Positions 10,801-38,563 of a stretch of 64,000 nt of DNA are shown here, one piece after another (the first letter of the stretch is position 1; each line of letters opens with the position of its first letter). The position numbers and the translations under genes were made by a program. The stretch is from assembly GCA_964106915.2 (NCBI GenBank), contig OZ066915.1; one strand, given 5' to 3'. The notes beneath the pieces are model-generated. The model was not told where the DNA came from. It worked only from the letters and a program-made list of their open reading frames with translations, and searched no databases. This DNA is from Podarcis gaigeae. Taxonomy: Eukaryota.

Positions 10801-12164
10801 CTCAAACCAAGTCCATATAATAGAAACAGCAGTGATTCCTAAAAAGAGGAAATAACCTTCACTGAAACCACAGCAAAGCAGTAAATATAAAACCCAGCTA
10901 TCCCAAAGGTGTTTTGTTTTTGTTTTTTTGAAAAGCCATGTGTTTGCCTAAACACCTGTGTCAAGAGTCAGATAAGCCTCCTTGGGTTGGGCATTTCTTA
11001 AGACTCACGCTACCACAGAGAAGGTTCTGCAACTTGTGGACACCCACACAGCACATAAATTCTTCTCAGTAGGGAAGACAGAAATGTTTCTCACTTCCTT
11101 CTTTTTGTGTAGCAAGGCAGTGCCTGGCTTGGAAAACCACACCTAGTCCTGCCTCTTCTTTTGTCAGAATAGTGGAGGTGAAGGAAGTAGGGGGTCAGGA
11201 CCGAAACTTTCGATTGCTTGCCCTGCCCTGCCTTTTAAACTTCTTGGGGCTTAAATATACAAAATGGAAACAGTGACACCAACTTTTGTTTAGTGAAAGG
11301 GTGTGCAACTAAACAGATTGCAGTGGAAAGTGGGCAGATTTTCCTGGCTTTGAATGTTACTGTGTTCAGTAGCAGTGGCACCTAATTTACAAGCTAGAAG
11401 GCTATTTAACTTACATATCTAATTTTTATGAAATAATCTGCATCATCATGTACAAGCTCCTTGCTGACTGAACTACATTAGATACCCAGATATTTAGCTT
11501 CACAGTATGAACCCAAATTTCCATGACTTTTTGTTCACTGTGTTCCATCCAAGAGTCATAGTACTATGAGCTCCAGGACCTTGATTTAGTGAAATTTAAG
11601 ATGGCTGTCTTAGATTTACTTCCGCATCCATGAAAATTAGATTTGTTGGAAAAATGTTTTTCAGTAATATGATATTTACCCACAAACAGCATTCATTGCC
11701 AACCCTCATTGTGGAGGTTTCAGTATACCTTTTTTGTCTCTTGAGTTATGCAAAGCAAATATAATGTCATAACAAAAGTTTTAATATGCTTTAGGATACT
11801 ACATAAGAAGTATCATTGACACTTGAAAGAGTGAGCCATTCTTTGCCATACCTGTTGGAAATCAGATGCAATTAACTCCTGATATGTCAAAACATGTTTT
11901 ATTCCTTTCTTGTGAAAGAAATCCCACTTTGGCTGTTCCATTATGTTGGGAAATCCTGGTGGAGTCTCATGTAAACTCCCTTAATAGAAGGGAGGTGATA
12001 GCTTAATCAGATGCTGTAAGCATGGGTTCATGGTGTAATTGCTTATTAGTGCATCACAATGCTTTCCTTGCGTGACTATGAACCTTCTGCCTGGTATTGT
12101 GGATTTTGTGGAGAGCCCACCTCCCCTTCTTGCCCCTAATTATAGTACCTGCTTAATGACCAAG

Positions 12165-12490
12165 AGGACGCAGGTGGCGCTGTGGGTTAAACCACAGAGC
12201 CTAGGACTTGCCGATTAGAAAGTCAGCAGTTTGAATCCCCACAACGGGGTGAGCTCCCATTGCTCGGTCCCTGCTCCTGCCAACCTAGCAGTTCGAAAGA
12301 AGGAAGGTAAACGGGAAGGTAAATGGCGTTTCCCTACGCTGCTCTGGTTTGCCAGAAGCGGCTTAGTCATGCTGGCCACATGACTTGGAAGCTGTACTCC
12401 GGCTCCCTCGGCCAATAGAGCGAGATGAGCACCGCAACCCCAGAGTCGGTCATGACTGGACCTAATGGTCAGGGGTCCCTTTGCCTTTAC
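12165..12490 (+). mobile_element. Sauria SINE
   Basis: Head ggtggcgctgtgggttaaacc, (ccttta) tail, 13-bp TSD cttaatgaccaag. Confidence 0.92.
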
Positions 12491-13181
12491 CTTAATGACC
12501 AAGTGCCATTTTGACTTAATAAACAATACAAAAGATAACATAGTACTAGGCAATTCCACAACAGGCAGAAACCTAGTCCTCTCCCTCAATATTTGAAGAA
12601 CTAGTAAAAAAAGATTTCTTGGCTCTGTTAACCAGCATCTAAAATAGGACCTAATGGGTTGGTGGTGATTGCAGGCTACAAATTGTCACTTCTCTGCATC
12701 TGGGCCTCCTTTCATGATGACCAAAGGCAGGCTAGAAACTATTTGCTCTGGTCTACCCAGTGCAAAAGTTGCTGACCTTGCTATAAGCAGTGAGGTTCCA
12801 CAGAGGGTTGGGATGTCCTAGCTGTCCTGGTGATGATCCCTCAGATCAGGTTGCCTCTGGTCATGTCACTTGTGAACATCTCCCTGCCCCACACTGCGGG
12901 TACAAAGGGGAGTTTCCGTCCAGCCAGAGGGAGATTAAGTATGCTTGCCAAGGTTATTAATAAATGTTGTACAGCATTGTAGAATAGACCCTGCTAATTA
13001 CATTGTGGCCCATTTCTTCATTGTTGCTGTAGTGTGCCTTAAACTATGTAATGAGATTTGTATATCCAGGCAGATCTCAGTCAAATAGTGGTGGTGCCCC
13101 CAGAATATGGAAAGTACAGAAAATACAGAATACAGGAAATATTCTTCCAAGGAACTTTAAGTACATAAAGCTGTAGCCTCT

Positions 13182-19505: not shown

Positions 19506-19535
19506 GCTGCCTTCCAGGAGAATGTTGGTAGACAG
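19506..19535 (+). CDS. TBCD: TBCD exon (~ex16, 30 nt)
   Basis: cttag|GCT...CAG|gtatg; AAFQENVGRQ. Confidence 0.95.
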
Positions 19536-19828: not shown

Positions 19829-20087
19829 TCATATTTTTTGCTCTATAAGACTCACTTTCTCCCTCCTAAAAAGTAAGGGGAAATGTGTGTGCGTCTTTCT
19901 GAGCGAATGCAGGCTGCGCAGCTATCCCAGAAGCCAGAACAGCAAGAGGGATTGCTGCTTTAACTGCACAGCAATCCCTCTTGCTGTTCTGGCTTCTGAG
20001 ATTCAAATTTTTTTTTTTCTTGTTTTCCTCCTCGAAAAACTAGGTGCATCTTGTGGTCTGGTGCGTCTTATAGAGCGAAAAATACAG
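19829..20087. mobile_element. Tc1/mariner-type MITE with internal hairpin
   Basis: TIR (C)CGTATTTTT.GCTCTATAAGAC / GTCTTATAGAGCGAAAAATACAG, TA flanks. Confidence 0.85.
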
Positions 20088-20965: not shown

Positions 20966-21715
20966 AGAATCATAGACTTGTAGAGTTGGAAGGGACCCCA
21001 AGGGTCATCTAGTCCAACCCCCTGCAATGCAGCATTCTCAAGTAAGGTACCAATTACAGATGCCACCCAACCTCTACTTAGAAACTTACAAGGAAGGAGA
21101 GTCTACCACCTTCCAAGGGTGTCCATTCCACTGTCAAACAGCTCTTACTGTCAGAAAGTTCTTCCTGATGCTTAGCTGGAATGTCCTTTCTTGTAACTTA
21201 AAGTCATTGGTTCAAATCCTACCCTCCAGAGCGGGAAGAAAACAAAGTTGCTCCATCCTCCAGGTGGCAGCCTTTTAAAGATTTGAAGATAGCTTGGTTC
21301 ATCATATCCAGTACTGCTGGTTATCTGTTCTAGCATTTGTGAATTTAGTAGATAGTTAATCATAAAGTTTTGAGAAGAAACGTTGATCATTATCCTATTC
21401 TACATAGTCTGTTAGATGCCCTTGTTCTTAGCCCCAAAACTTTATGCTATTATACTTTTGGATTTTTAGAAAGCTCTATACTATTCTTTTCGGGGTTTGG
21501 TTATCAACACTCTGCACAGTATTCCATGTATCTTTGCACCATAGATATTTATACAGGCATTATAATGCTGAGAGTTTTCTTTTCTGTTTCTTTCTTAATG
21601 GCATTCATCTTTTTCACAGCTGTCACATACTGAGGCAATGTTCTTGTTGAGTTATCTACCACAATCCCAATATGCCTTTATTGGTCAGTTATCCACAGTT
21701 CAGACTCCATAAGGC
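20966..21715 (-). mobile_element. CR1 LINE 3' fragment
   Basis: CR1 3' end agaatcatag...gttggaagggacc...atctagtccaaccc, plus degraded ORF2 C-terminal sequence. Confidence 0.8.
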
Positions 21716-21719
21716 ATGT

Positions 21720-22462
21720 GCGATTTTCTTTTCTATTTCTGTTTGGTCATAATGTGATTTAGTATTTCTTCATGCTTGGAGTGGCCAATCCTCGCTGCCT
21801 TCAGAGTTTTCCCAGCTTTTTCATTTAGTATCAACTCTTGACTCGCACTGCATCTGAAACTTAAAACACTCCCTCGAATGTGTCTGCACCCTGGGGTGGC
21901 TTTTACCACACTCTTCATTGACTGCTTCTCACTGAGGTGGCAAAATAGCCTGGTGAACATGCCAGTGCTGGTTATGATGCTGCATTATGAGAAAGGGTGC
22001 AGTTTGGCTAAGTTCTTCATTTTTACCAATATAGCCTTTTGATTATTTTTCTTTTTCATCAGAGTGACATTCATATATTTCTTTTGGTTTGGTTACACTT
22101 GAATGTGTGCAGTCCGCTCCAATTGTTGTTGTTGTTTAGTCATTTAGTCGTGTCCAACTCTTCGTGACCCCATGGACCAGAGCACGCCAGGTACTCCTGT
22201 CTTCCACTGCCTCCCGCAGTTTGGTCAAACTCATGCTGGTAGCTTTGAGAACACTGTCCAACCATCTCGTCCTCTGCCGTCCCCTTCTCCTTGTGCCCTC
22301 CATCTTTCCCAACATCAGGGTCTTTTCCAGGGAGTCTTCTCTTCTCATGAGGTGGCCAATGCAGCAGTTTACGCTGATAGCGCTGCTGGTAGAATCTTGT
22401 ACCTCACATCTCATTTTACTCAAATGCTGATACTTAGCGTTTATATAGGAGTTTACATTTTC
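21720..22462 (-). pseudogene. Antisense remnant exon P14, interrupted by Bov-B and ending at CR1
   Basis: ENVNSYINAKYQHLSKMRCEVQDSTSSAISVNCCIG[Bov-B]ADCTHSSVTKPKEIYECHSDEKEK*...; the frame is restored when Bov-B is removed. Confidence 0.5.
22123..22359 (-). mobile_element. Bov-B (RTE) LINE 3' fragment
   Basis: GHLMRREDSLEKTLMLGKMEGTRRRGRQRTRWLD...VHGVTKSWTRLND C-terminus, (AAC)n tail, ccaat on both sides. Confidence 0.93.
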
Positions 22463-22726
22463 CTGTAATCTCTAATTATAAATTATTATTAACGAATAAT
22501 ACCTCATCTCTACAAAACATAGCTAATAACTGGAAAGAGAATGCATCTTTTCAAACGGGAGTTTTGATATAGACCAGGCTGGTGAAATTAGGCCCATTTG
22601 GCTAATGTGGTAGTTTGTGAGAGGTCATGCTCACCTGACATCATTTGGTGTCAGGTGGGCATGACCTACCAGAAACTATTGGACGTCATTTGATGTCAGG
22701 TGCAGGACAGGTAAAGCCATGGCTCC

Positions 22727-22913
22727 TTAGTGCTTTTCAAATTCTTCTTTTGCAGTAGGTTTTATATTTAGCACTGAATGCAAATCCCTCTGCTTTTCTA
22801 TGGTCTTGGATCTTGCCATCTGTGAAACATGGCTTGCAGAGGAATGACTACTTTTTTTATCTGACCTGCTGGCTCTCACTTCTGATATTGACTTCGGTGT
22901 GTCCCAAAAAGAA
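22727..22913 (-). pseudogene. Antisense remnant exon P13 (phase 2 start; open ~60 codons)
   Basis: ctttgttacag|T TCT; SFWDTPKSISEVRASRSDKKSSHSSASHVSQMARSKTIEKQRDLHSVLNIKPTAKEEFEKH*. Confidence 0.6.
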
Positions 22914-22992
22914 CTGTAACAAAGGTGCAGAATGTTCAAATTGCTCTCTGTGTTGTCACTCCAGAGATTATAGTAATGACAAAAGTACTCAC

Positions 22993-23096
22993 CGTTTAGA
23001 AGTGGATTGAGTAAACACCCTGCTCTGACTTCATCCTGTTTCAAGTTGCCAGTTTTCTTGGGTCTCAAACTTGCAGCTTTACCTTAGCTGGTCTTG
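22993..23096 (-). pseudogene. Antisense remnant exon P12 (104 nt, phase 0-2)
   Basis: atttcag|CAA...CG|gtgagt; two stops. Confidence 0.55.
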
Positions 23097-23331
23097 CTGA
23101 AATTTATTGGTGGCACATGTCCCATGTCCCAATGCAAATACTGTAATTTAACTATGGAAATGGTGATTACAAACGAAGTGATGCTGCCTCTAAAAAAAAA
23201 AACCACTTGATTATCCATAGTTCCTTTTGTTCCTTTTTCAGGATGTGCTTTACATCCATTGAGAAAAGCTTCCCTCTCTCTTTTGAGATGCTTCTCTTTT
23301 GTGGACATGTTACAGAAAAACTATTGCATAC

Positions 23332-23581
23332 CTGACTGTGCAGATGCCATGTATTGTAGCTATGATAGTGAAGCCTCTTGCGATGAGTGCCTGGAAGTAA
23401 AGGGATGAGAGCGATGTCTTGCCAAAATGGCTGGCCTTCCTTTACTACTACTTTTTGCAAAAGCCATTAGGCCTCTGTCCTTTGTTTGATAAGGGGAGGC
23501 ATTCTGTACACAGTGTTTGTATTGCAGTTCAAAATCAGAGGTACTCTCTCCTGTGATTCAGAAGAGCAGCATGCAGTGTTG
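23332..23581 (-). pseudogene. Antisense remnant exon P11 (250 nt, phase 2-0)
   Basis: gtgtcctag|C AAC...CAG|gtatgc; 83 codons, one stop. Confidence 0.6.
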
Positions 23582-23878
23582 CTAGGACACGGAAGTGAGC
23601 ATTGATTTATTGTGGGTAGAACTTGGATTAAAAACCAGTGGAAGAGGATTTGAGACAAAGCAGCAATTCCAGTTGCAATACAGGAATCATTTGGGAGCGA
23701 AGATGAAGAGAGAGAAAGAGACAGAGTAATAAAATTGCAGCAAGTGGGGTGTGAGAGGCGGGAGAAGATAAATGAGAGAGAAAGAGAGATGGGTATCACA
23801 CCAAAAGAGAGAGATGGGCTTACATGGATAGGGAGAGCAGAACATGGCAGGAGAGAGAGAGATGGTTTTACTACTTAC

Positions 23879-24362
23879 TGCTAAGGAGTAATCTGCTGGA
23901 TGAATAAAAATTTAATCCAGATAAGATGGAGATGCTTCTGTATGTCAGTGTTCAAGCTTCTCCTGATGTTGAGATTTTGCTTGTCCTTGATGGATATCTC
24001 TTTCCTTTTGGGGGTTTCTTTGGTTTTTTTTTCTGGGTCTGGTTTTTCTGTTGGATTCTCAAGAACAATGGTTGCGGTCAAGGAGGGAGCTTTGCCCAGT
24101 TCAGGCAGATATACCAACTGCTCCCATTTCTGGGGAAGAGTCACGCCTAGTCATAATGCCTTAGTTATTACTTTAATGTGCTTTTTGTGGGGCTGCCTTT
24201 GAAAGTGTAAGTTGGTCGAGAATTCAAGCCTGGATGCTTGGGGGATTGTGGCTTTCTGATGGAGAGGCCCTTTGCTGCATCCCAGTATGAGTGTGTTGTT
24301 AGATTAATCAGCATGTGTAAGAGGTCATTTCTGTAGCCGCATCCCAGTGTTGGAACACTCTC
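23879..24362 (-). pseudogene. Antisense remnant exon P10 (484 nt)
   Basis: ctctctgcag|GAGAGT...CA|gtaagt; includes LPQKWEQLVYLPELGKAPSLTATIVLENPTEKPDPEKKTKETPKRKE. Confidence 0.55.
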
Positions 24363-24920
24363 CTGCAGAGAGTTTGCTAGATGAATAATTTTTGTGCAGG
24401 TGGGCTTTTTATAATTTTTGGTGTTTTAAACTGATCCTGATTATTAATTCCTTTCCATACTGTTTCTGGGCTTGGGTATTTATTTGATTACTTTATTGTT
24501 TGTTAGTTATTTGTTCTTTGACTGTTGTTAGTTGCCTTGAGAAAGTGTGGAGATCAATTATTCTAAATCAAAAGGAAGGAAACTTGGGATCTGTTTGGGA
24601 GTGGTGACAGATTTGCCTCGAGCCTTGAGTTTATAAGGAGCAGCTCATTTCACATGCCATAAAATCAGTCCAGAGGACCTGAGTGTTGGGTTGCTTTTCT
24701 TGCTGTAAGAGAAGATTTGCTACTGTGTCACAAAAATTGACAGCAAGAAGGAAGTCTATACTAGTGAACCACCTTTTCCCCCAGGGTGGAGTACCAAATT
24801 ACTCCTTGCAGCCTAAGAAAATGGCTGCTAATTATGATAGGTATGTGTGATCCATTTTTTCCTAATCAGTTTTGTAATGTGAATCAGCCAGACAACTTTC
24901 CTCATGACTACAAGGGAGAT

Positions 24921-26261
24921 TTAGGACTTATTTTCCATCGGAAGACATAATGTTGTTGCTGAGTTTTGCAAGGAAAAAACAGTGTTAGATTTGTGTGCAG
25001 TCCTTCTGTTTTCTTGATTACAGTTGCTTGCAGGGCTGAGATAATTTTTTCTGGAGTGGGCGTTCCACAATGAAAGATCACGTTTCAGGTAGCATGACAT
25101 TTTCTCCAAAAGGACAGCTCATCAATCAATCAACCAACTATACTTTTTGCTGTGAAATTGCAGTCTCTTCCTGGCTCTTAGGGAGGTACTTGCCAAGCAA
25201 TCAGGGAATTTTGCCTTGCTCATACTGTTGTGAGTTACCTGTTTAAAGTGACTGCAACAGCTACTTAAATGGGGCAATCAGCAGTGCTATGCTGAACACC
25301 TCCTCCTCTTCCTTGACAAGGAGGGAGTGGATCATGTTGCACATAGTGTTGTTGATGACCTCATTTTGAGTACAGTGGTACCTCGGGTTACATACGCTTC
25401 AGGTTACAGACTCCGCTAACCCAGAAATAGTACCTTGGGTTAAGAACTTTGCTTCAGGATGAGAACAGAAATGGTGTTCCGGCAGCCCGGTGGCAGCAGG
25501 AGGCCCCATTAGCTAAAGTGGTGCTTCAGGTTAAGAACAGTTTCAGGTTACGAATGGACCTCCAGAACGAATTAAGTACTTAACCTGAGGTACCACTGTA
25601 TGTTGCTGCCACTTTAAAGATGATATTTTTGTCCCATTCATTTTACTCCTGACAGATTGCAGAAGATGGAAACCCTTTTTTCATGAGATAGTTTCATATG
25701 TCTCCTTTTTATGCCTCAGCTCTACTTCATTGTGCTTTCCTTTAGAGAAGTTATTTTTAAAAGCCGGTCTTTCTACCACATTTCGAACAACTTGAATAGT
25801 TTGTTTTAGATTGTAAGCTCTCTCTAAATTCTAAATCTGGTGGCAAGTAGAACCTATGCTTTCTTTTAGCAAATCATGACAGAGTGTTGGCAAAGCAATA
25901 AAACCTATATTATGCAAATTTTCTGTATTCACATTTCTTTTTTTATGAGCAAGACTTACTGTGGACATTTTTTTTATCTCTGGCATCCCAGCATCTGAAG
26001 TCTCACTCTCTATTTCAAGCACTTCAATTATATGGTTGAAACAGTTACATTTTTTACCATTTTACATTTTTATAGCTCTCTGGTGAAAGCATGTAAGCAA
26101 AGTTATTTACAAAAATAATTATGAAAAGGTCTAAAATTGATCCATCCTCATAAACTATGGTTTCACTTTTGTTGCATTTTGGTGATTAGTTTCTAGTTCT
26201 AGTTTACTTTGTCTTTAGTTGATGTGTTATCTCCTCTTGTAGGAAAATTTTCATTATGATA
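24921..26261 (-). pseudogene. Antisense remnant large exon P8 (3' end uncertain; MITE inside)
   Basis: Acceptor ttttgcttcag at 26262. One frame runs from ~26022 to ~25140 without frameshift once the MITE is removed. Confidence 0.5.
25373..25598. mobile_element. Tc1/mariner (Tigger-like) MITE
   Basis: CAGTGGTACCTC TIRs, TA TSD. Confidence 0.92.
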
Positions 26262-26482
26262 CTGAAGCAAAACAAGGTCAACTAATAATAACTCTGTGAC
26301 CTATATATCAATTAGGAATGACTCAAGTGAATTTTCAAGCAACAAAAGGTGTGCTAGAGACTTGGGCTGTGGTTCTATACCCATGTGACATTAAGCCTCA
26401 TTCCCAGTTAATTGGACCTTCTCAGTAGACATGGGTTTTTCTGGGCAGATTGAATACTGAACTATTAATCCTGAGAACCTAC

Positions 26483-26644
26483 TTTTCTGTACTCTGGATA
26501 TAAGCCCTCATAGAAAATGGATGACTAGAAGGAATTAAAGTCTAGTGCTAGGGCAGTCTCTCCCCTCTGTGGCTCTAGCTGTGTTTTGTTGGAGGATGAG
26601 CTGCTGTTGGTCTGATAGATTTGTCCCAAATACTGACACTTTAA
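26483..26644 (-). pseudogene. Antisense remnant exon P7 (162 nt)
   Basis: tgtctttcag|TTAAAG...GAAAA|gtaggt. Confidence 0.45.
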
Positions 26645-26774
26645 CTGAAAGACATGAGAGTGTGATGTATGTAACTTTAAAATGTTGATCTGGCTTAGTA
26701 GATTGCCCTTGGACTTGGGAAGTAGCAATAGAAACAAGAGTAAAATAAAAGTGATAGGTCCCAGGAAGCTCGAT

Positions 26775-26991
26775 GGATGCTCGGGTTGTGAACATGATCC
26801 ATGTGGGATGCACGTTCGCAACCCGCAGCATTTGCAACCCGTGTCTGCGCATGCTCGGGTTGCAGTTTGGCGCTTCTGCGCAGGCGCGACCGCCGAAACC
26901 TGGAAGTAACCCGTTCTGGTACTTCCGGGTTTCAGCGGTCCGCAACCTGAAAAAACACAACCTGAAGCGGCTGTAACCTGAGGTATGACTG
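26775..26991. mobile_element. Tigger-like MITE, left TIR damaged
   Basis: Right end gaggtatgactg-TA; internal sequence related to 47988 and 30397. Confidence 0.75.
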
Positions 26992-27936
26992 TATAATGAT
27001 GTTACAGTGTTCAAGGAGGTGGGGGAAATTGCAGCAGTAAAGGTTGGAAAGCTGATGAGTGAGGGAGTGAGACATTTACGCTTTTGAGGGTGCAGTAAAC
27101 CTGGGGTCACCATGGTAGAGGCATGGGAAGCAGTAAATGACATGAGACCTTTTGTGATTGAAATGGCCACATCCAAATGGATTACAAGTGTAAGAAGAGT
27201 TTTGCTTAAGCATTGGATGTGTATTCTAGATCAGCCAACCCTGTTGCTGGCTGATAACTACCTCAGGATCAATCCTGGGTTAAGCATCCCCAGTTGACGC
27301 ACACCAAATAAGAGTGACCCCTCCAGAATGCCAGTTGGGGTGTTCTGTGGCCTGTTAGCTCCCATCTGGGCATATGGACAGAATCCTTCCCCTTGGGAAC
27401 AGTTTACCAGGGTACCACGATACTTTCATTCAGAGGAGAGAGGGGATAAGGCTCCTTTCCACACCCACACCCCGATTAGACTAAGGATCCAACCCAGTGC
27501 TTTTTTCTGCCACAGGGAAATTCCTCCCTGTCCTTGACTACGACAACCAATTCAATCCACTGCAAAGTCATGTGCAAAGTCACCATGCTTCCCTTCAGGC
27601 GGGGCCAAATATATACAGGTTGGGAGGGTGGGATGTCTGATGCCGACTGCATTGCTGGAAGGCAGCACAGCCGTCTTTTAAGTTTTGGAGGCAGACCTAA
27701 GTGAAGACGGGCTTACTCAGGTCTGTCTCCAAATTCCCGCCCCACAGTCTGGCCTCTAATTGACCAGTTAAAATTCTGAAGGTAGGAAAGTCTCATCACT
27801 CCCCATGGCTGACTGATAACGCCTGCCAGCCAACCATGTGGATGGTTTTGCCTCTCCCCAGCTCACCCATGGAAGTTTTAAAGGTTTTAACAATGAAGGT
27901 CGGTGCAGGGTGCCAACATGGGTCTCTACAGATTAC

Positions 27937-28341
27937 CAATGGATGAGGCACGGTAGAGATCTACAGTGCATGGCTAAGCTTAAGTTAAGACATTGATCCA
28001 ACACATGACACACTCCTTGTGCTCTCCTGAAGAGCGAAGGAGGCACAACTATTTGCCATCCTGAGCCTGGGCAAGCAATTTTGTTCTGCTTCATAGAGTT
28101 TGAGGCTACAGTGTTTGTTTGAGCAGGTGCTCTTGCCTCGGCATCTTTGGAGATGGTGGCAAAGTCAATGGAGATGGCTCACTCTTGGACTTAACTCCAG
28201 CTGCCTCACCAGAAGGAGAGGCTTTTTCCCCTAACAGCAGAAGGCACCAGGGTTACATGAACAGATGGTGACATTACGCTTGGGATAGTTGATATCACAG
28301 GGGTGGGCCGCTCTCCTAACACTCTGGGTGCTGATGAGGGG
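27937..28341 (-). pseudogene. Antisense remnant exon P6 (Ser/Pro-rich; 3' end uncertain)
   Basis: Strong acceptor cccttcccatttcag; PSSAPRVLGERPTPVISTIPSVMSPSVHV / GEKASPSGEAAGVKSKSEPSPLTLPPSPKMPRQE with one frameshift. Confidence 0.5.
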
Positions 28342-28482
28342 CTGAAATGGGAAGGGGGTTAAGAAAATTCCTAGTGATGGCAGCTCTGTATCGGGAGAGT
28401 TTTAATGTCTGATGTGTTACAATTTTTAATATATGCTGTAAGCGGCCCAGAGTGGATGGGGAAACCTAGCCAGATGGGTGGG

Positions 28483-28494
28483 GTAGTAGTAGTA

Positions 28495-28543
<49 letters not shown>
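28483..28543. repeat. (TAG)n(TAA)n microsatellite (retroposon tail)
   Basis: Follows gctgtaagcggcccagagtgg...; seen directly. Confidence 0.9.
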
Positions 28544-28544
<1 letters not shown>

Positions 28545-28801
28545 TGTTTGGCCTTTTGGATCCCAGCCTTTGTTCTAGATCTCAGTGGGAGGTACTGAAA
28601 GCTCAGCCAAATCCTGTCTGTGTAGCCACTCCATTTTATCTGTATATTTCCTGTATATTTGGATTCCATTGTTTTTTGTGATGCTAATATGGGACAAATT
28701 CTTTGGGAATTATTCTTGTGTCTACCTAAGTGAAACATTCCCCAGTCTTACTACTGTGATTATATGTGATTATGTGTGATTTTCTCTTCTAACTTTGATA
28801 G

Positions 28802-28887
28802 GGTACTTTCCCACATGGGATTGACATATTGACTGCAGCTGATTATTTTGCTGTTGGAAGCAGAGCGAATTGTTTCCTCAATATAAG
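28802..28887 (+). CDS. TBCD: TBCD exon (~ex17, 86 nt)
   Basis: gatag|GGT...AG|gtaag; GTFPHGIDILTAADYFAVGSRANCFLNI. Confidence 0.96.
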
Positions 28888-29208
28888 GTAAGAGTCTCTA
28901 AATGTAAGTACCTCCTCTACCTTAAATTTATGGGTGACACACAGATAATTTTGGATTTTAAAAAAGTCTTTCTTGTTCTACATATGGTTGCACGGGAAAT
29001 TGGAGAACATTGTGAACAATATGTTTCTGCAATGTTCTATGTGAGAAGACTGAGTGAAATTGGTAGTGCTTGTGTTCTTCACTATTTGTAAAATAATTTT
29101 AAGTAGAAGTCCATATATAGCCCTCTGATTTTTATGTTTAATAGGAGAGGCACTATTAAGGGTGCCACATGGTGTTTCCTTTTATTTTACAAGAAATAGG
29201 GCATTTAC

Positions 29209-29438
29209 CTACACCAAACTGAGTGGGGGGGGGGATAATTTTTCTTCTTCAGCGGGTTGCCCTGGATTGTGAGGTTGTCCTTGGCAGCAGGACACAAATG
29301 TTGCTTAAGTTATCTCAGTAAATCTACAATGGGGCCAGGGGCCAAGCAGAGCCCTTTTAGGTTACTATACTAGCCTCTTTAGGTGGAGGCTTCAAGTGGG
29401 ATCGCAAGCACTGCCTAGGTGTGTGATACCTTGAAACC
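29209..29438 (-). pseudogene. Antisense remnant exon P5 (230 nt, degraded)
   Basis: ttaattag|GG...GTAG|gtaaat; several stops and a probable slip in a C-run. Confidence 0.4.
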
Positions 29439-29614
29439 CTAATTAAGAACTGAGTACAAAAGTAACATGATGGTGTGGAAGGAAAACTTGTGGAGGGGGA
29501 AGTATAAGATGGTGGGCAATACTAAATAAGAGGGAGCTTTAATGTAGATGGGACAACCTTATGTGTCCTCAAGCTGAACACTGTGTTTCCAGAAAGAAAG
29601 GGGGGTAACGTTAC

Positions 29615-29946
29615 CTTGAGTATTAACTGGTGCTAAGCTTCCTTGTCATGGTGGTGAATATAAATATCTGGGGTGAAAATAGGGTCCTGTTTGCATAATT
29701 TGGTTGGCGATTCCTTCCCTTGATGTATGCTCATCAGTGTTGTTAGCTAAGTACCTATACTGGGCTGTGTTTTGCAGATAGTTTCCTAGTGCTTCTGGCA
29801 TGGAGCTTATTTTCATCAGGGGTCTCAGATTTTCGGTTTGGTGGGAATGCCTTGGATGGCTTGACTGTGTTAGGATCTAGGCAGAAAGGAAGACATTTGA
29901 CATTTCTGGAGTTTTCATGCCTCTGCAAAACTGGCAGAAGTCACTC
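29615..29946 (-). pseudogene. Antisense remnant exon P4 (332 nt, phase 2-1)
   Basis: ttcactag|G AGT...CAA G|gtaacg; 110 codons with 2 stops (SDFCQFCRGMKTPEM...HPRYLYSPP*QGSLAPVNTQ). Confidence 0.6.
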
Positions 29947-29996
29947 CTAGTGAATGTGATCAAGGAGAATAGCCAGTGTATGGTGTTGTTTTCTTC

Positions 29997-30370
29997 TTAA
30001 GAATGTAAGAATATGAGAGCGTGCTACATCAGGCTAAAGGCCCATCTAGTCTAGCATCTGTTCCTACAGTGACCATCACAACCCCAAGATCTCTTTCCTG
30101 CCCAGTCACTGCCACTTCAGACACCATCTTCGTATATGTGAAGCTGGGAATTTTTTAGAGAGGTTCTTTTGGATCTCTTCACTTACCTTGTTTTGTTTTT
30201 ACCACCCTGAATAACTTTATGCCATCAGCAAATCTCACCTTCTCAGTGCTCACCCCTAAATATGAACCAAGTGAAAAAGGCCAGTTGCAATACAGATCCT
30301 TGGAGGAACCCCTTCCAAGAATAATCAAGTTATAACGAGTGTGCTTTAACCAGTTACTGATCTGTAAGAA
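29997..30370 (-). mobile_element. CR1 LINE, deleted fragments
   Basis: RT motif FADGIKLFRVVKTK, CR1-type tail ggcccatctagtctagcatc. Confidence 0.75.
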
Positions 30371-30396
30371 GACCCCCCCCTCTTTCCCCCTCCCCC

Positions 30397-30717
30397 CAGT
30401 GGTACCTCTGGATGCGAACGGGATCCGTTCCGGAGCCCTGTTCGCATCTAGAGCAGAATGCAACCTGCGTCTGCGCATTTGTGTGTGTGCGGGTCACGAT
30501 TTGCCACTTCTGCGCATGCGCTTGATGTCATTTTGAGTGTCTGCACAAGCGGCGAAACCCGGAAGTAACGCGTTCCGTTACTTCCGGGTCGCCACGGAGC
30601 GCAAAAGGACACATTCTACTCATGTAAAAACACGCTGATTCCCGGACTGTCTGCGGGCCAGATTTAGAAGGTGATTGGGCCACAACTGGCCCCCGGGCCT
30701 TAGGTTGCCTACCCCTG
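30397..30717. mobile_element. Half Tigger-like MITE (30397-30602) fused to half hAT MITE (30603-30717)
   Basis: Left TIR cagtggtacctc only; right TIR gttgcctacccctg only. Confidence 0.75.
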
Positions 30718-30728
30718 GTGTAGTGTGT

Positions 30729-30753
30729 ACACACACACACACACACACACACA
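30729..30753. repeat. (CA)n microsatellite
   Basis: seen directly. Confidence 0.95.
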
Positions 30754-30860
30754 GAGGGAGAATATTAATATAGCCCCCTTCTGGTTGTGCTTGTTCATTG
30801 CATGCAGGGATTTTGAAAAAGCAACATGGGGGAGCATTAAAAAATACAACCCCCACTTAC

Positions 30861-31025
30861 TGTCTGAAGTAGTATAGTCCAGAATTCTACCAACCCACTG
30901 TGTTTAGTATGCATATCCGTTCTAAACCAAATGTTTCCTGTGCATCAGCTTTGAAGAATATTCTTAAGGCCAGCAGAACCATATGAATTAATGTGCTTAC
31001 TGAATACAAGTCAAGTAATGGTGAA
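30861..31025 (-). pseudogene. Antisense remnant exon P3 (165 nt, phase 2-2)
   Basis: cccttcag|T TCA...AGA CA|gtaagt; SPLLDLYSVSTLIHMVLLALRIFFKADAQETFGLERICILNTVGW*NSGLYYFR. Confidence 0.65.
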
Positions 31026-31120
31026 CTGAAGGGAGGCTGGCAATTTGCAGGCCTTGAAGAAAGTAGCGTGTTTAGCATACTTTGTCTGCGGTGTGAGCAT
31101 ACTTTGTTTTTGTTACTTAC

Positions 31121-31267
31121 TCAGTTTCTAAACTACCTTTTTTATTGTCCCTTTCATCCTTAAGCTGTTCAGCCCACACTCTTCCATGGCACTCCACCCT
31201 CCCTTTAGTCTTTGCTTTTTTTGGTACACACCTTACTCCTACACGCAGCCAATTTCCCAACTCTTTT
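31121..31267 (-). pseudogene. Antisense remnant exon P2 (147 nt, phase 2-2, fully open)
   Basis: tttgtttcactatag|A AAA...ACT GA|gtaagt; KELGNWLRVGVRCVPKKAKTKGRVECHGRVWAEQLKDERDNKKGSLET. Confidence 0.65.
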
Positions 31268-31348
31268 CTATAGTGAAACAAAAACAAGGAAATGTGATGG
31301 GTCCGGAAGGTAGTTCTTTCCCATTTTTCTTATGTACTTTCGAGTTAC

Positions 31349-31498
31349 CGGATGAACAGGTCATAATTGGAGGATTGACTAGGTTTTAACTAAAGTACAA
31401 CTGTCCCATTCCATGGAGAAAACTGATCAGGGCCTTGATTGTAAATTATTTTTTTCCATGACGCATAAACAATCAGTAATTTTAGAGGGTTTGGCCTA
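31349..31498 (-). pseudogene. Antisense remnant exon P1 (150 nt, phase 2-2)
   Basis: ttacag|T AGG...ATC CG|gtaact; RPNPLKLLIVYASWKKIIYNQGPDQFSPWNGTVVL*LKPSQSSNYDLFIR; weak acceptor. Confidence 0.55.
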
Positions 31499-32447
31499 CT
31501 GTAAGGTATGCTATCCCTTCTCTTGCATCTGTGAGCTGTGTATGTTTCACTACACAGATTCTTGTTGCACAAGCATAGGCTTGCAATACGTCATGTATGG
31601 CATGTCCTGGTTTTCAGGTGTAAAAATGGCAGCGGGGGAATTTTGCCTAGTGCGCAAAATGTCAGGGAAAACCCGGATGTATGGCAACGTAATGGAAAAA
31701 GCAGCAGAAACATCTCCAAAAGCTTAAAATCACTAATTTGGGGGGGGGGCTGGGAGTCCTTCAAACCTTCAGGCCTTAAAATATCCATGATTTTTAGTTT
31801 TCTCTTTCCATTTGTGCGGTTTAATTAATGGAATGATTCATTTCTATCAATAGAGATTTATCTTGCTAATTTAAACTTTTCAAAAATCTAAGTTGGTTAG
31901 CATTTTTACATATATTCTTGGAGGAGAGCAGAAGGTTCTGTTTTCTTTCAATTTCTTTTTTTTGATGGTCAGTTCTTAATAATGTTGACTGTGACTAATG
32001 AAATAGCCTTATTTTACTAAGCAGTAGAAATAAAATAGCAAAAAATACCAGGTTCTCTGTTAATGTGCCCCAGATAAGCCAGAGAAATGGCTAATTTCCC
32101 TCCCTGATTAAACATCCCCTCCCCCAGCAATAGCCATGATAATACTTTCTCTACAAAAATGTATTCACACTTCATTTTAGCCAGCCCCTTTGCTTACATG
32201 CCTTTTTAATATAAAGTTTACATGACTTAAATAAGGTCTCATTTAATTTCAGCATTGGCTTTCATAATGCTGTGTTGGTTAAAAGCAGAATATTAGTATA
32301 TGTTTGGGATGAGATGGCAAACATAAATAAAAAGCTTTATGTGTCAAGCTTGACTTCATATATATGTCTATTAAATTCCTTCCTTAACTTGTAAGCCTTG
32401 GACAGTTTGAGGTTATTAGGTTCTTGTTGAAATTGACTTTGAAATAA

Positions 32448-32582
<135 letters not shown>

Positions 32583-33761: not shown

Positions 33762-33828
33762 GCCTGGCATGCTCTAGTCCATGGGGTCACGAAGAGTCGG
33801 ACACGACTTAACAACTAAACAACAACAC
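33762..33828 (+). mobile_element. Bov-B extreme 3' tail
   Basis: gtccatggggtcacgaagagtcggacacgact...(aac)n with 8-bp TSD aggaactt. Confidence 0.88.
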
Positions 33829-35354: not shown

Positions 35355-35621
35355 AGATAAGCTTACTAGTCAATACATGATGATCTCACAGGTAATATGG
35401 GAAGAAATACTTAGTATTGGTTTGGAAGGTTTTGTGACATCTGTCAGGAACGCTGGTGGCTTTAGAAGTTTGACTGACACCTTAGTTTTCAGAGAGAAGA
35501 ATAAGCACCTATACTTTCCAGTTAATGCCTTGCCACTGGCAGATAGGTTTCTAGGACTCCCTCACATGTGACAGAAAGAAGCTCATATAGTATTCCTCTG
35601 ATGTGGCTTTTAACTTTGCAG

Positions 35622-35682
35622 ATCCATTACATCATATTTGGATGAAAAAGCCTTGGAAGGACTTAAACAGATTCATGTGGAG
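35622..35682 (+). CDS. TBCD: TBCD exon (~ex21, 61 nt)
   Basis: tgcag|A TCC...GAG|gttgg; SITSYLDEKALEGLKQIHVE. Confidence 0.94.
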
Positions 35683-36595
35683 GTTGGTACAAATTCTGTC
35701 TTATGAAAAAGAAAATGTTTTTGCACTCTTTAAATAGGAAAGTTTCTTTTGTTAAAATCGATAATGTAAAAATTATTTGGTGTGTGTGCATTGTTATATG
35801 GCATGCCCACCTCCATGCAGCTTACTGAATGTTTGAGGGAGTTTCCCAAAGTGGACCATAGCCCGACAGCTGTGGCTGATAGGACAGATCAATGGCAGCT
35901 GCACAGCTGCATGGTGGTAGGGAGGTAGACTATCTGCAGCCAGCCCTGCAAAAACTGGCAGGTGGCACGTTCTGTTGCTCCTCTCAATCTGCTGCCTGCA
36001 CCAATGGATTTCCTTGGCTCACAGAAGAAGTGGCTCACCAGTAATGCAGACTGGAGATATATTTTATTTTTTTCCATAATGTGCTGTACAAAAGTCTGTA
36101 TGAGATTTGAAATGAAGTGGATTTTCTTCTTCAACATAAACATGCAGAGAATTATCCTACACTTAGAATATTGTATGTACGTGGGATCTATTACTGGAGC
36201 TTCCTGGGCAGTAACAGTATAACTAATATTCTTATTAGGAAGATAGATACTATTTTGTTAGCCATCAATGATCTATATGTATGATCAAATATGAGTGAAA
36301 CAATACCGAATTATGTCGCAAAAACTTAATCCTTGTACTCTTATAAAAAAAATACTGTGTACAGTTAACATATTTCTGTGGGGTGGAGTTTTGACTAAAT
36401 TGGTGTTTCTCAGCCATTTTGAAATGGGACCTATTGGTAAATTTACATAACCTTTTGGGATCCAGAATCCCATTGTTGTGTGGTCCACTCAGGAACACAT
36501 CAGGAACTAGCTGTGGGCTATAACTTGCAATTTTAGATTCACTGAACTAAATAGAACTTCTTTATTCCGTATCTTATACCAGTTTTCTCTTACAG

Positions 36596-36618
36596 CTTTG
36601 CCGTCGTCAGTTGTATCG
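36596..36618 (+). CDS. TBCD: TBCD microexon (~ex22, 23 nt)
   Basis: tacag|CTT...CG|gtaag; LCRRQLYR; needed to keep the frame between its neighbours. Confidence 0.92.
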
Positions 36619-38563
36619 GTAAGAGAATTAATGCCAAGTAAAGAAAAGCCTCATAAAAGACGCAGTCCACAAAAAAGCTTGGGTGCCTACTTTCATACTG
36701 ACTCTGTGCATGGGTCTGCTGTGTTTCCTAAGCGTAAGCATAGCTTGGCTGGCATGTGGCCACAGCAGAACTTGCTGCTTGGAATAGAGAGCATGACTGG
36801 AGCAGCCTGTCTTACAAATTCTTTTATGATGCCCATACATAATTACAGCCCAGTGGAAAGTGTGACCCTGTCTTATAGCAACATGCATAGGCTCTCTGGC
36901 ATCTCAGGAGATGTGCAACAGGCAGACAAGGGGTGCCATGTTGAGACCATGACCAGCGCAAGGTATTTTGCCACCCTAGGCAAGGTAAAAAATTATAACC
37001 AACACCTTCCTTACCCTGTCTTGTACAGTAAACACCATGGCATTGGTCCATGAAGTAGCCAAAAGTTTCCTGTGATAATTTAAAGCCCCCTTCTCTTGAT
37101 GCTTCACTTTGTAACATTTAAAATTTGGAACATCGATGAAGCGAACTGAAAATACAGAGCCTAGAGGCAGACTTAATGCTTCAAAATTGGAGAGTCTGTT
37201 GGGAAAGGATGTAGAGACAGGAAACAACTGATACACTTTCAAGCTTTTAGAATCCCCCCCCCCTTATATACAGGTCCATTATATACGTCACAGCTGTTTT
37301 ATTAAGAACAATTCCGAGTTTGGAAAGGGAGAGGAAAGTATATACCAGATGTGTGTTTAGTTGCACCTTTTGAATTGTCTTTCTGTGTAGTCCATGTTCA
37401 CTTCCATGTTTTTGAAATGTAAGACTGAACCAGAATTTCTGGGAGCAAAATGACTATTTTAAATACAAACCATTCTTTGAGACAGCTTTCTTCATTTCGC
37501 GCATTGGTTAATCTGCCTTAGTTCATAATATGTTCATATTTATAGAGGTATCACACTGGCTGTTATACTTTCTGTAAATTCTTTTAATGTCAGGGTGAGG
37601 CTAGGGTATAATTTGACTTTCTCACAAAATGCAAGCTTGCATTTATCGGTTTCATTAGATTCTTAATAATGCCTTTCTTATCAATTAGACTTCAAACAAG
37701 CATCATGTTTCTCTTCAACGTAGTACTTTGCATAATAGAGTTATTCACTTGTGAGCATATTAACATAGTTTCAGGATATCAAAATACCTTTTAAATGGTA
37801 TATAAAATATTCTGCTTTGGATCATTTTGTAATAGCAAGCCACTTAGCTTTTAATAGGCAAGCACTCTGCTAAACAAGCTGAACTTGTTTTCTGAAGAGC
37901 AATCAAGCTGAAGTGCCCTGAAGGTGCTCAGCTGAGAAGTGGTTTCTTGGATTTTGAGAAAGTGTCGTCAGCCATCTGTTGAAGAACATACAAAACATTT
38001 TTTTCCATGGTTTTCTTTATCTGTTTCTGGAATGAAGATTTCTTTTACAGAAATAGGAGTGATATGAAACACTTTCTCAGAAGAGAGTAATTTGATTTCT
38101 GTTTGTTGTGTAAGTGAATGATATCAGCAACAGCAATGAAGTCACATTACCGAGTGATGATCTGTATAGATCATGTGTAATGCATGTGTAATTTCATCTC
38201 TCAATGAAAATGTTAAGAGCACAAGGCCATACAATGAAATAAATTTATTTTGGGTATTAGATAAACCAAAGAATTACTTCACAAAACAAAGCACGTGTGG
38301 GATTTATGAGATTAACTTCCAAGTCTTGAGACAGATGAGTTTTATAGGATAGCTTGCTCTCGTTTGTCTCTTCCTCTGCACTGCCACATCATGTAAAAGG
38401 TTTTACATAAAGCAAGATGAAGTGATAGAAGAGTTAATTTATTTTTTATTTTGAACCTTAACAAGACAGAAAAGAGAATTTTACTTTTCCTTTCCTTTGT
38501 ATTCCTCGTAAAGATAGTGATTTGAGATTTTCAGCCAATACATTTTCCTTTTTCCTTTTTCAG

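What the first reader, a model, noticed from the sequence alone, without database searches (positions are those of the whole stretch)
21720..31498. Hidden multi-exon antisense gene, apparently dead, nested in TBCD introns and straddling a TBCD exon
Seen in sequence: at least 12 minus-strand segments bounded by pyrimidine-AG acceptors and GT donors (gtaagt x3, gtgagt, gtaact, gtaacg, gtatgc), some separated by compact 79, 81 and 95 nt introns. Two runs splice in phase with no adjustment: P1-P2-P3-P4 (~264 codons, 4 stops) and the 3' part of P10 into P11-P12-P13. The N-terminal exons read like a folded domain; later exons are Ser/Pro/Lys/Glu-rich. The TBCD exon at 28802-28887 lies in one of its introns. 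Inference: an intron-containing gene of possibly >1000 codons decayed in place (unitary pseudogene), not a retrocopy or TE. I know ZNF750 as a gene nested in TBCD; this peptide does not resemble it and I cannot name it. An intact orthologue in other reptiles would be an uncharacterised gene.
Basis: partly seen in the sequence, partly recalled or inferred. Interest (0 to 1): 0.9.

Follow-up and report, generated by a model that had tools for sequence, protein, structure and literature searches.

The report
Possible dead gene inside lizard TBCD
Inside two introns of a lizard's TBCD gene, four opposite-strand pieces line up like the exons of a dead, unnamed gene, but nothing outside this sequence confirms it, and chance plus transposon debris explains it almost as well.

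Summary
TBCD on the plus strand is confirmed. The minus-strand block P1-P4 is as described: AG/GT borders, 81 and 95 nt introns, 264 codons, 4 stops. It is the only such tight chain in the window (0.3-1.6% of simulated strands with thresholds fitted to it; 27-46% once loosened). The rest is weak: in-phase chains can be threaded through any DNA, P12 does not enter P13's open frame, and two related species carry a 2-nt insertion that breaks the P6 frame. No homologue, domain or spliced RNA was found; one blank search type also failed its positive control. Two RNA runs gave only unspliced, low-depth contigs. Divergence to close relatives equals that of flanking intron (about 2%), so present constraint is not evident. 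Four stops without a frameshift fits neutral decay poorly. Verdict: about even odds between a decayed intron-containing antisense gene (0.5) and chance plus transposon debris (0.38). 'Unitary' and '>1000 codons' are unshown. The scan had noted this same stretch and similar fossil-gene candidates at other loci of this genome; it showed no copy of this sequence on other DNA. Spliced models were searched exon by exon; the joined search was left out.

The parts
31349..31498 (-). P1, candidate exon, 150 nt, one in-frame TAG; acceptor very weak (-6.1), donor 2.4
31121..31267 (-). P2, candidate exon, 147 nt, no stop; best acceptor (7.4), GTAAGT donor; folds alone as a beta-hairpin (pLDDT 72)
30861..31025 (-). 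P3, candidate exon, 165 nt, one in-frame TAG; acceptor -0.1, GTAAGT donor
29615..29946 (-). P4, candidate exon, 332 nt, two in-frame stops; a stronger acceptor lies at 29876 in another phase
25239..26061 (-). Lys/Ser/Glu-rich stop-poor stretch (198 codons, 4 stops once the inserted element and one TA are removed); the frame is broken by a 2-nt insertion at 25976 in both relatives
23879..24362 (-). P10, weak candidate; stops in all frames (4-9)
23332..23550 (-). P11, weak candidate, 219 nt, one stop in the chain frame
22993..23151 (-). P12, weak candidate, 159 nt, one stop in the chain frame, GTGAGT donor
22727..22913 (-). P13, candidate last exon after a 79-nt gap; its 61-codon open frame is not the frame entered from P11-P12
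28802..28887 (+). TBCD exon lying between P4 and the downstream segments; expressed
32501..32581 (+). next TBCD exon, closing the intron that holds P1-P4
   Evidence: AG/GT borders; reads on in phase from the 28802 exon; identity from knowledge of TBCD
19506..19535 (+). previous TBCD exon, opening the intron that holds the downstream segments
25371..25600 (.). short inverted-repeat element with TA at both ends, inserted in the stop-poor stretch; further copies in the window
29960..30770 (.). repeats filling most of the P3-P4 gap (high-copy elements 30397-30770; CR1-like piece about 29960-30255, family from memory)
   Evidence: depth table
26774..28400 (.). high-copy short element 26774-26995 and a GC-richer, moderately repeated stretch 27000-28400, probably a decayed retroelement

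Best explanation
The stretch does nothing today. P1-P3, probably with P4, are leftover exons of an intron-containing gene once transcribed antisense to TBCD from inside its intron. It lost function through nonsense changes and then took transposon insertions; being on the other strand it never had to be removed for TBCD to splice. It is now copied only as part of TBCD intron RNA and drifts at the neutral rate. Shown: geometry, frame, stops, single copy, no visible constraint among close relatives, only unspliced RNA contigs. Inferred: that it was ever a gene, the order of events, and any link to the segments downstream of the TBCD exon, which are at best heavily eroded remains.
For: Only three-exon, short-intron geometry on either strand of the window, and it is the stop-poor one; 1.6% of simulated strands, 0.3% with P4; the loosened test also recovers real compact TBCD exons. 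Five of 11 minus-strand GTAAGT in 15% of the window. Strongest A/T and G/C strand skew of the window at 20-29 kb (0.13 and 0.10). Stop-poor minus-strand windows slightly in excess after masking repeats (p 0.05-0.06; plus strand 0.2-0.4). Amino-acid make-up of P1-P4 (0.00 bits per residue) lies between intron (-0.05) and TBCD exons (+0.06). Removing the 25371-25600 element keeps a frame (one chance in three). Single-copy depth in two related genomes. Divergence 2.0-2.2% over candidate contigs versus 2.05-2.07% elsewhere.
Against: No vertebrate relative of P2 among 1.84 billion proteins; nothing in Pfam, NCBIfam, PHROGs, PDB, ESM Atlas. The chance level rises to 27-46% with looser thresholds. 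Weak acceptors. Four stops imply about 11% decay, at which 4-9 frameshifts are expected in P1-P4 and none is seen; best joint probability 0.002-0.011 (assuming 7-15 substitutions per indel). The composition excess of P1-P3 is not significant (p 0.10-0.14).
Confidence: 0.5

Rival explanations
1. No gene was ever here. The interval is ordinary intron full of old, partly unrecognisable mobile-element debris lying antisense to TBCD; the reader picked AG/GT pairs and stop-poor frames that arise by chance.
For: Equal chains are threaded through all 64 kb and simulated DNA; loosened test gives three other minus-strand loci; a stop-free 181-codon variant of P1-P4 can also be built from weak sites, showing how much freedom there is; the P6 frame depends on a 2-nt allele absent from both relatives; P13 frame mismatch; stops without frameshifts; no homologue; much of the interval is repeat.
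Against: The tight P1-P4 chain is rare in the null; donor enrichment, strand skew and composition all lean the same way.
Confidence: 0.38
2. The segments are remains of an old intron-bearing DNA transposon or LTR element, now below 80% likeness to other copies, so coding-like but not a host gene.
For: A neighbouring stretch (27000-28400) is moderately repeated and reads, from memory, like a decayed Gypsy-type integrase; strand skew fits an inserted element.
Against: P1-P4 are single-copy at 80% likeness; no transposase, integrase or reverse-transcriptase family hit; one element cannot straddle the older TBCD exon.
Confidence: 0.07
3. A live, fast-evolving, tissue-restricted gene with slightly different exon borders: 31389-31349, P2, 31025-30899 and 29876-29646 give 181 codons with no internal stop.
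For: The stop-free variant exists, and uses the stronger P4 acceptor (5.6); the tissues of the two RNA runs are unknown.
Against: It needs an acceptor of -6.4 and a donor of -0.1, first Met at codon 78; RNA contigs run unspliced across the P3 and P1 borders and P2, P4 have no cover; neutral-level divergence.
Confidence: 0.05

Closest known systems
Unitary (unprocessed, in-place) pseudogenes
   Same: Exon-intron layout kept in place, premature stops, transposon insertions, neutral drift.
   Different: They are defined by an intact orthologue in another species; none was found or could be looked for here.
ZNF750, the known antisense gene nested in a TBCD intron (own knowledge)
   Same: Same host gene and orientation; shows TBCD introns can carry a nested gene.
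   Different: ZNF750 has long coding exons and a zinc finger; no such frame is in the window and no piece hit a zinc-finger family.
AID/APOBEC deaminases (APOBEC3G; NAD1 clade present in lizards, PMC5889660)
   Same: 19 residues of P1 resemble the W..F/I..NQG..F.PW.G tail of APOBEC3G (E 0.11).
   Different: No Pfam APOBEC/NAD model hit; no HxE or SPCxxC catalytic motif upstream; P1 goes on into further exons. Treated as chance.
Cystatin repeats of an insect cathepsin F (P0001)
   Same: P2 is a predicted beta-hairpin with 22% identity to one repeat.
   Different: The E-value is summed over seven repeats; no Pfam cystatin hit. Treated as chance.

Membership tests
Unitary pseudogene | Exon-intron structure retained in place | tested here: inconclusive
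   P1-P4 geometry present, 0.3-46% by chance depending on thresholds; downstream chain not above chance
Unitary pseudogene | Disabling mutations | tested here: met
   4 in-frame stops in P1-P4; element inserted at 25371-25600
Unitary pseudogene | Neutral evolution | tested here: inconclusive
   2.0-2.2% versus 2.05-2.07% in two relatives, contig-level counts only, low power
Unitary pseudogene | Intact orthologue at the same place in another species | not testable with these tools
   No vertebrate genome collection; P2 protein search blank; short-query search failed its positive control
Unitary pseudogene | No working paralogue in the same genome | tested here: inconclusive
   Single-copy at 80% DNA likeness in two relatives; older paralogues not testable
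Processed pseudogene (retrocopy) | Intronless copy of a known mRNA | tested here: not met
   No long frame and no parent protein; segments are separated by intron-like gaps
Transposable element | Multiple genomic copies or a transposase/RT/integrase domain in P1-P4 | tested here: not met
   Single-copy depth; no family hit; repeat-library search not available
AID/APOBEC deaminase | HxE and SPCxxC zinc motifs upstream of the C-terminal PW motif | tested here: not met
   No such motifs on the minus strand upstream of P1; no Pfam hit
Active nested gene | Spliced antisense transcript | tested here: not met
   Two RNA runs, tissue unknown, contigs only; unspliced low-depth cover, no listed joint at P1-P4; lists were truncated

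The most novel reading that the evidence does not exclude
P1-P4 are the fossil of an unannotated reptile gene with an undescribed N-terminal domain, nested antisense in TBCD, intact in some other lineage and lost before these lizard species split.
Probability: 0.3. Interest if true: 0.6.

Novelty: new member of a known kind. Interest (0 to 1): 0.38.

Why it matters
If real, it points to a vertebrate gene missing from protein databases and to a datable gene loss in lizards, found without any homology; aligning one intron across reptile genomes tests it directly. If not, it is a calibration case: in-phase AG/GT chains with few stops are easy to find in intron DNA, which bears on the several similar fossil-gene calls in this genome.

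Tried and rejected
Homology, exon by exon: phmmer of P2 against 1.84 billion proteins gave three repeat proteins only. Word-indexed searches with P3 and P1 were blank but so was a real TBCD exon, so these blanks mean nothing. Pfam, NCBIfam, PHROGs, PDB, ESM Atlas, Rfam, metagenome contigs: nothing. Fold search of the P2 hairpin: only unrelated matches. APOBEC and cystatin leads rejected. Gypsy-integrase reading of 27000-28400 not confirmed by Pfam or PDB. Papers on a second nested gene in TBCD: none. Poly(A) signal and bacterial promoter scans were uninformative. No orthologous DNA from distant reptiles could be fetched.

Full report
Setting. The window has no N. TBCD runs on the plus strand: the exon at 28802-28887 matches solved TBCD chains (E 6e-11), and its neighbours lie at 19506-19535 and 32501-32581. 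P1-P4 sit in the 3.6-kb intron after that exon, the other segments in the 9.3-kb intron before it. The repeat content suggests a lacertid lizard (own knowledge); public DNA runs of two other species lie about 2% away.

Observation. P1 31498-31349, P2 31267-31121, P3 31025-30861 and P4 29946-29615 have AG/GT ends and give 264 codons with 4 stops; other frames have 10 or more. That part is right. The second chain is only partly right: the 3' part of P10, P11 and P12 join in phase, but the frame stops 11 codons into P13, whose 61-codon open frame is a different one. On a simple weight matrix the candidate acceptors have a median near 1.4 bits against about 9 for real TBCD acceptors; donors are slightly weaker than TBCD's.

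Chance. Three segments of at least 140 nt joined by two gaps of 70-110 nt with at most 2 stops occur once in the window, at P1-P3, and in 1.6-2% of simulated strands; adding P4 gives 0.3%. These limits were fitted to the observation. Loosened, the figures are 46% and 27%, and three more minus-strand loci appear, along with real compact TBCD exons on the plus strand. A free exon-chaining program threads stop-poor in-phase chains across the whole window on both strands; the minus-strand score is inside the null range while the TBCD strand is at its top. So the count of a dozen segments carries no weight; only the tight block does. Weak signals lean towards a coding past: 5 of 11 minus-strand GTAAGT fall in the region, strand skew peaks here, stop-poor windows are in slight excess on the minus strand (p 0.05-0.06), and amino-acid make-up lies between intron and TBCD, though not significantly for P1-P3 (protein background from memory).

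Homology. Searched exon by exon; the joined model was left out. P2 against 1.84 billion representatives found only three repeat proteins with summed scores; vertebrate coverage of that library was not controlled. The word-indexed search was blank for P1 and P3 and also for a true TBCD exon, so it is uninformative. Family libraries, PDB, the ESM Atlas and metagenome contigs gave nothing. A 19-residue likeness of P1 to the APOBEC3G tail (E 0.11) lacks the catalytic motifs and any profile support; lizards do have a divergent NAD1 deaminase (PMC5889660), but nothing ties it to this locus.

Reads. In two probable RNA runs of a related species the TBCD exon has depth 75 and 147; P2 and P4 have none; P3 and the P1 acceptor are crossed by single unspliced contigs of depth 3.6 and 2.3, as intron RNA or DNA would give. 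No joint at P1-P4 is listed, but the lists were cut and the tissues are unknown. In two DNA runs P1-P4 have single-copy depth, whereas 26774-26995, 29900-30300, 30397-30900 and 31500-31690 are high-copy and 27100-28100 moderately repeated. Contigs over the candidate exons differ by 2.0% and 2.2%, flanks by 2.07% and 2.05%. Both relatives have 2 extra letters behind 25976, which breaks the longest Lys/Ser-rich frame; at nearby sites three species agree against the window, so the window's longer frame may be the recent state. The state of the four stops in relatives was not shown.

Internal consistency. About 4.5% of substitutions in P1-P4 would make a stop, so 4 stops imply about 11% decay, and 4-9 frameshifts; none is seen (best joint probability 0.002-0.011; for P1-P3 alone 0.03-0.07). 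Either the gene died recently with unlucky stops, in which case close lizards should keep a findable orthologue, or P4 is not read in its ancestral frame, or the chain is chance. In favour of an older frame, removing the TA-flanked element at 25371-25600 leaves 198 codons with 4 stops. A stop-free 181-codon variant can be built from weak sites; I take it as a sign of the freedom in such models, not of a live gene.

Reading. The best single account is a dead, drifting remnant of an antisense intron-containing gene, supported only for P1-P3 or P1-P4 (0.5). Chance plus mobile-element debris is close behind (0.38); an old intron-bearing transposon (0.07) and a live gene (0.05) are minor. It works like a unitary pseudogene, but membership needs an intact orthologue, which these tools cannot fetch. 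Earlier notes of the scan repeat this stretch and list similar unchecked calls elsewhere in the genome; they are not evidence.

Noticed in passing
window 27000-28400: GC-richer (49%), moderately repeated stretch; its minus-strand text recalls a decayed Gypsy-type integrase (from memory); Pfam and PDB gave no hit.
   Followed up: partly
window 26538-27230, minus: 231 stop-free codons running through a short high-copy element; both flanks stay open in one frame without it (about 157 codons).
   Followed up: partly
window 35366-36546, minus; 36598-37053, plus: Further stop-poor stretches and a loose three-segment chain (35810-35366) in a later TBCD intron; no family hit. Could be more of the same remnant or chance.
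   Followed up: partly
window 11619-13001, minus: Two loose three-segment chains with short gaps, of the quality chance gives.
   Followed up: no
window 22122-22381 and 33763-33827: 3' end of an RTE/BovB-type or Sauria SINE-type repeat (family from memory), two copies in opposite orientation, 91% complementary over 65 nt.
   Followed up: partly
window about 21000-21700, minus: Decayed CR1-like LINE 3' end (from memory) abutting the lower border of the finding.
   Followed up: no
window 19924-20002: Near-perfect 34-bp inverted repeat with an 11-nt loop.
   Followed up: no
window 22611-22678: Imperfect palindromic stretch (82% over 68 nt) just downstream of P13.
   Followed up: no
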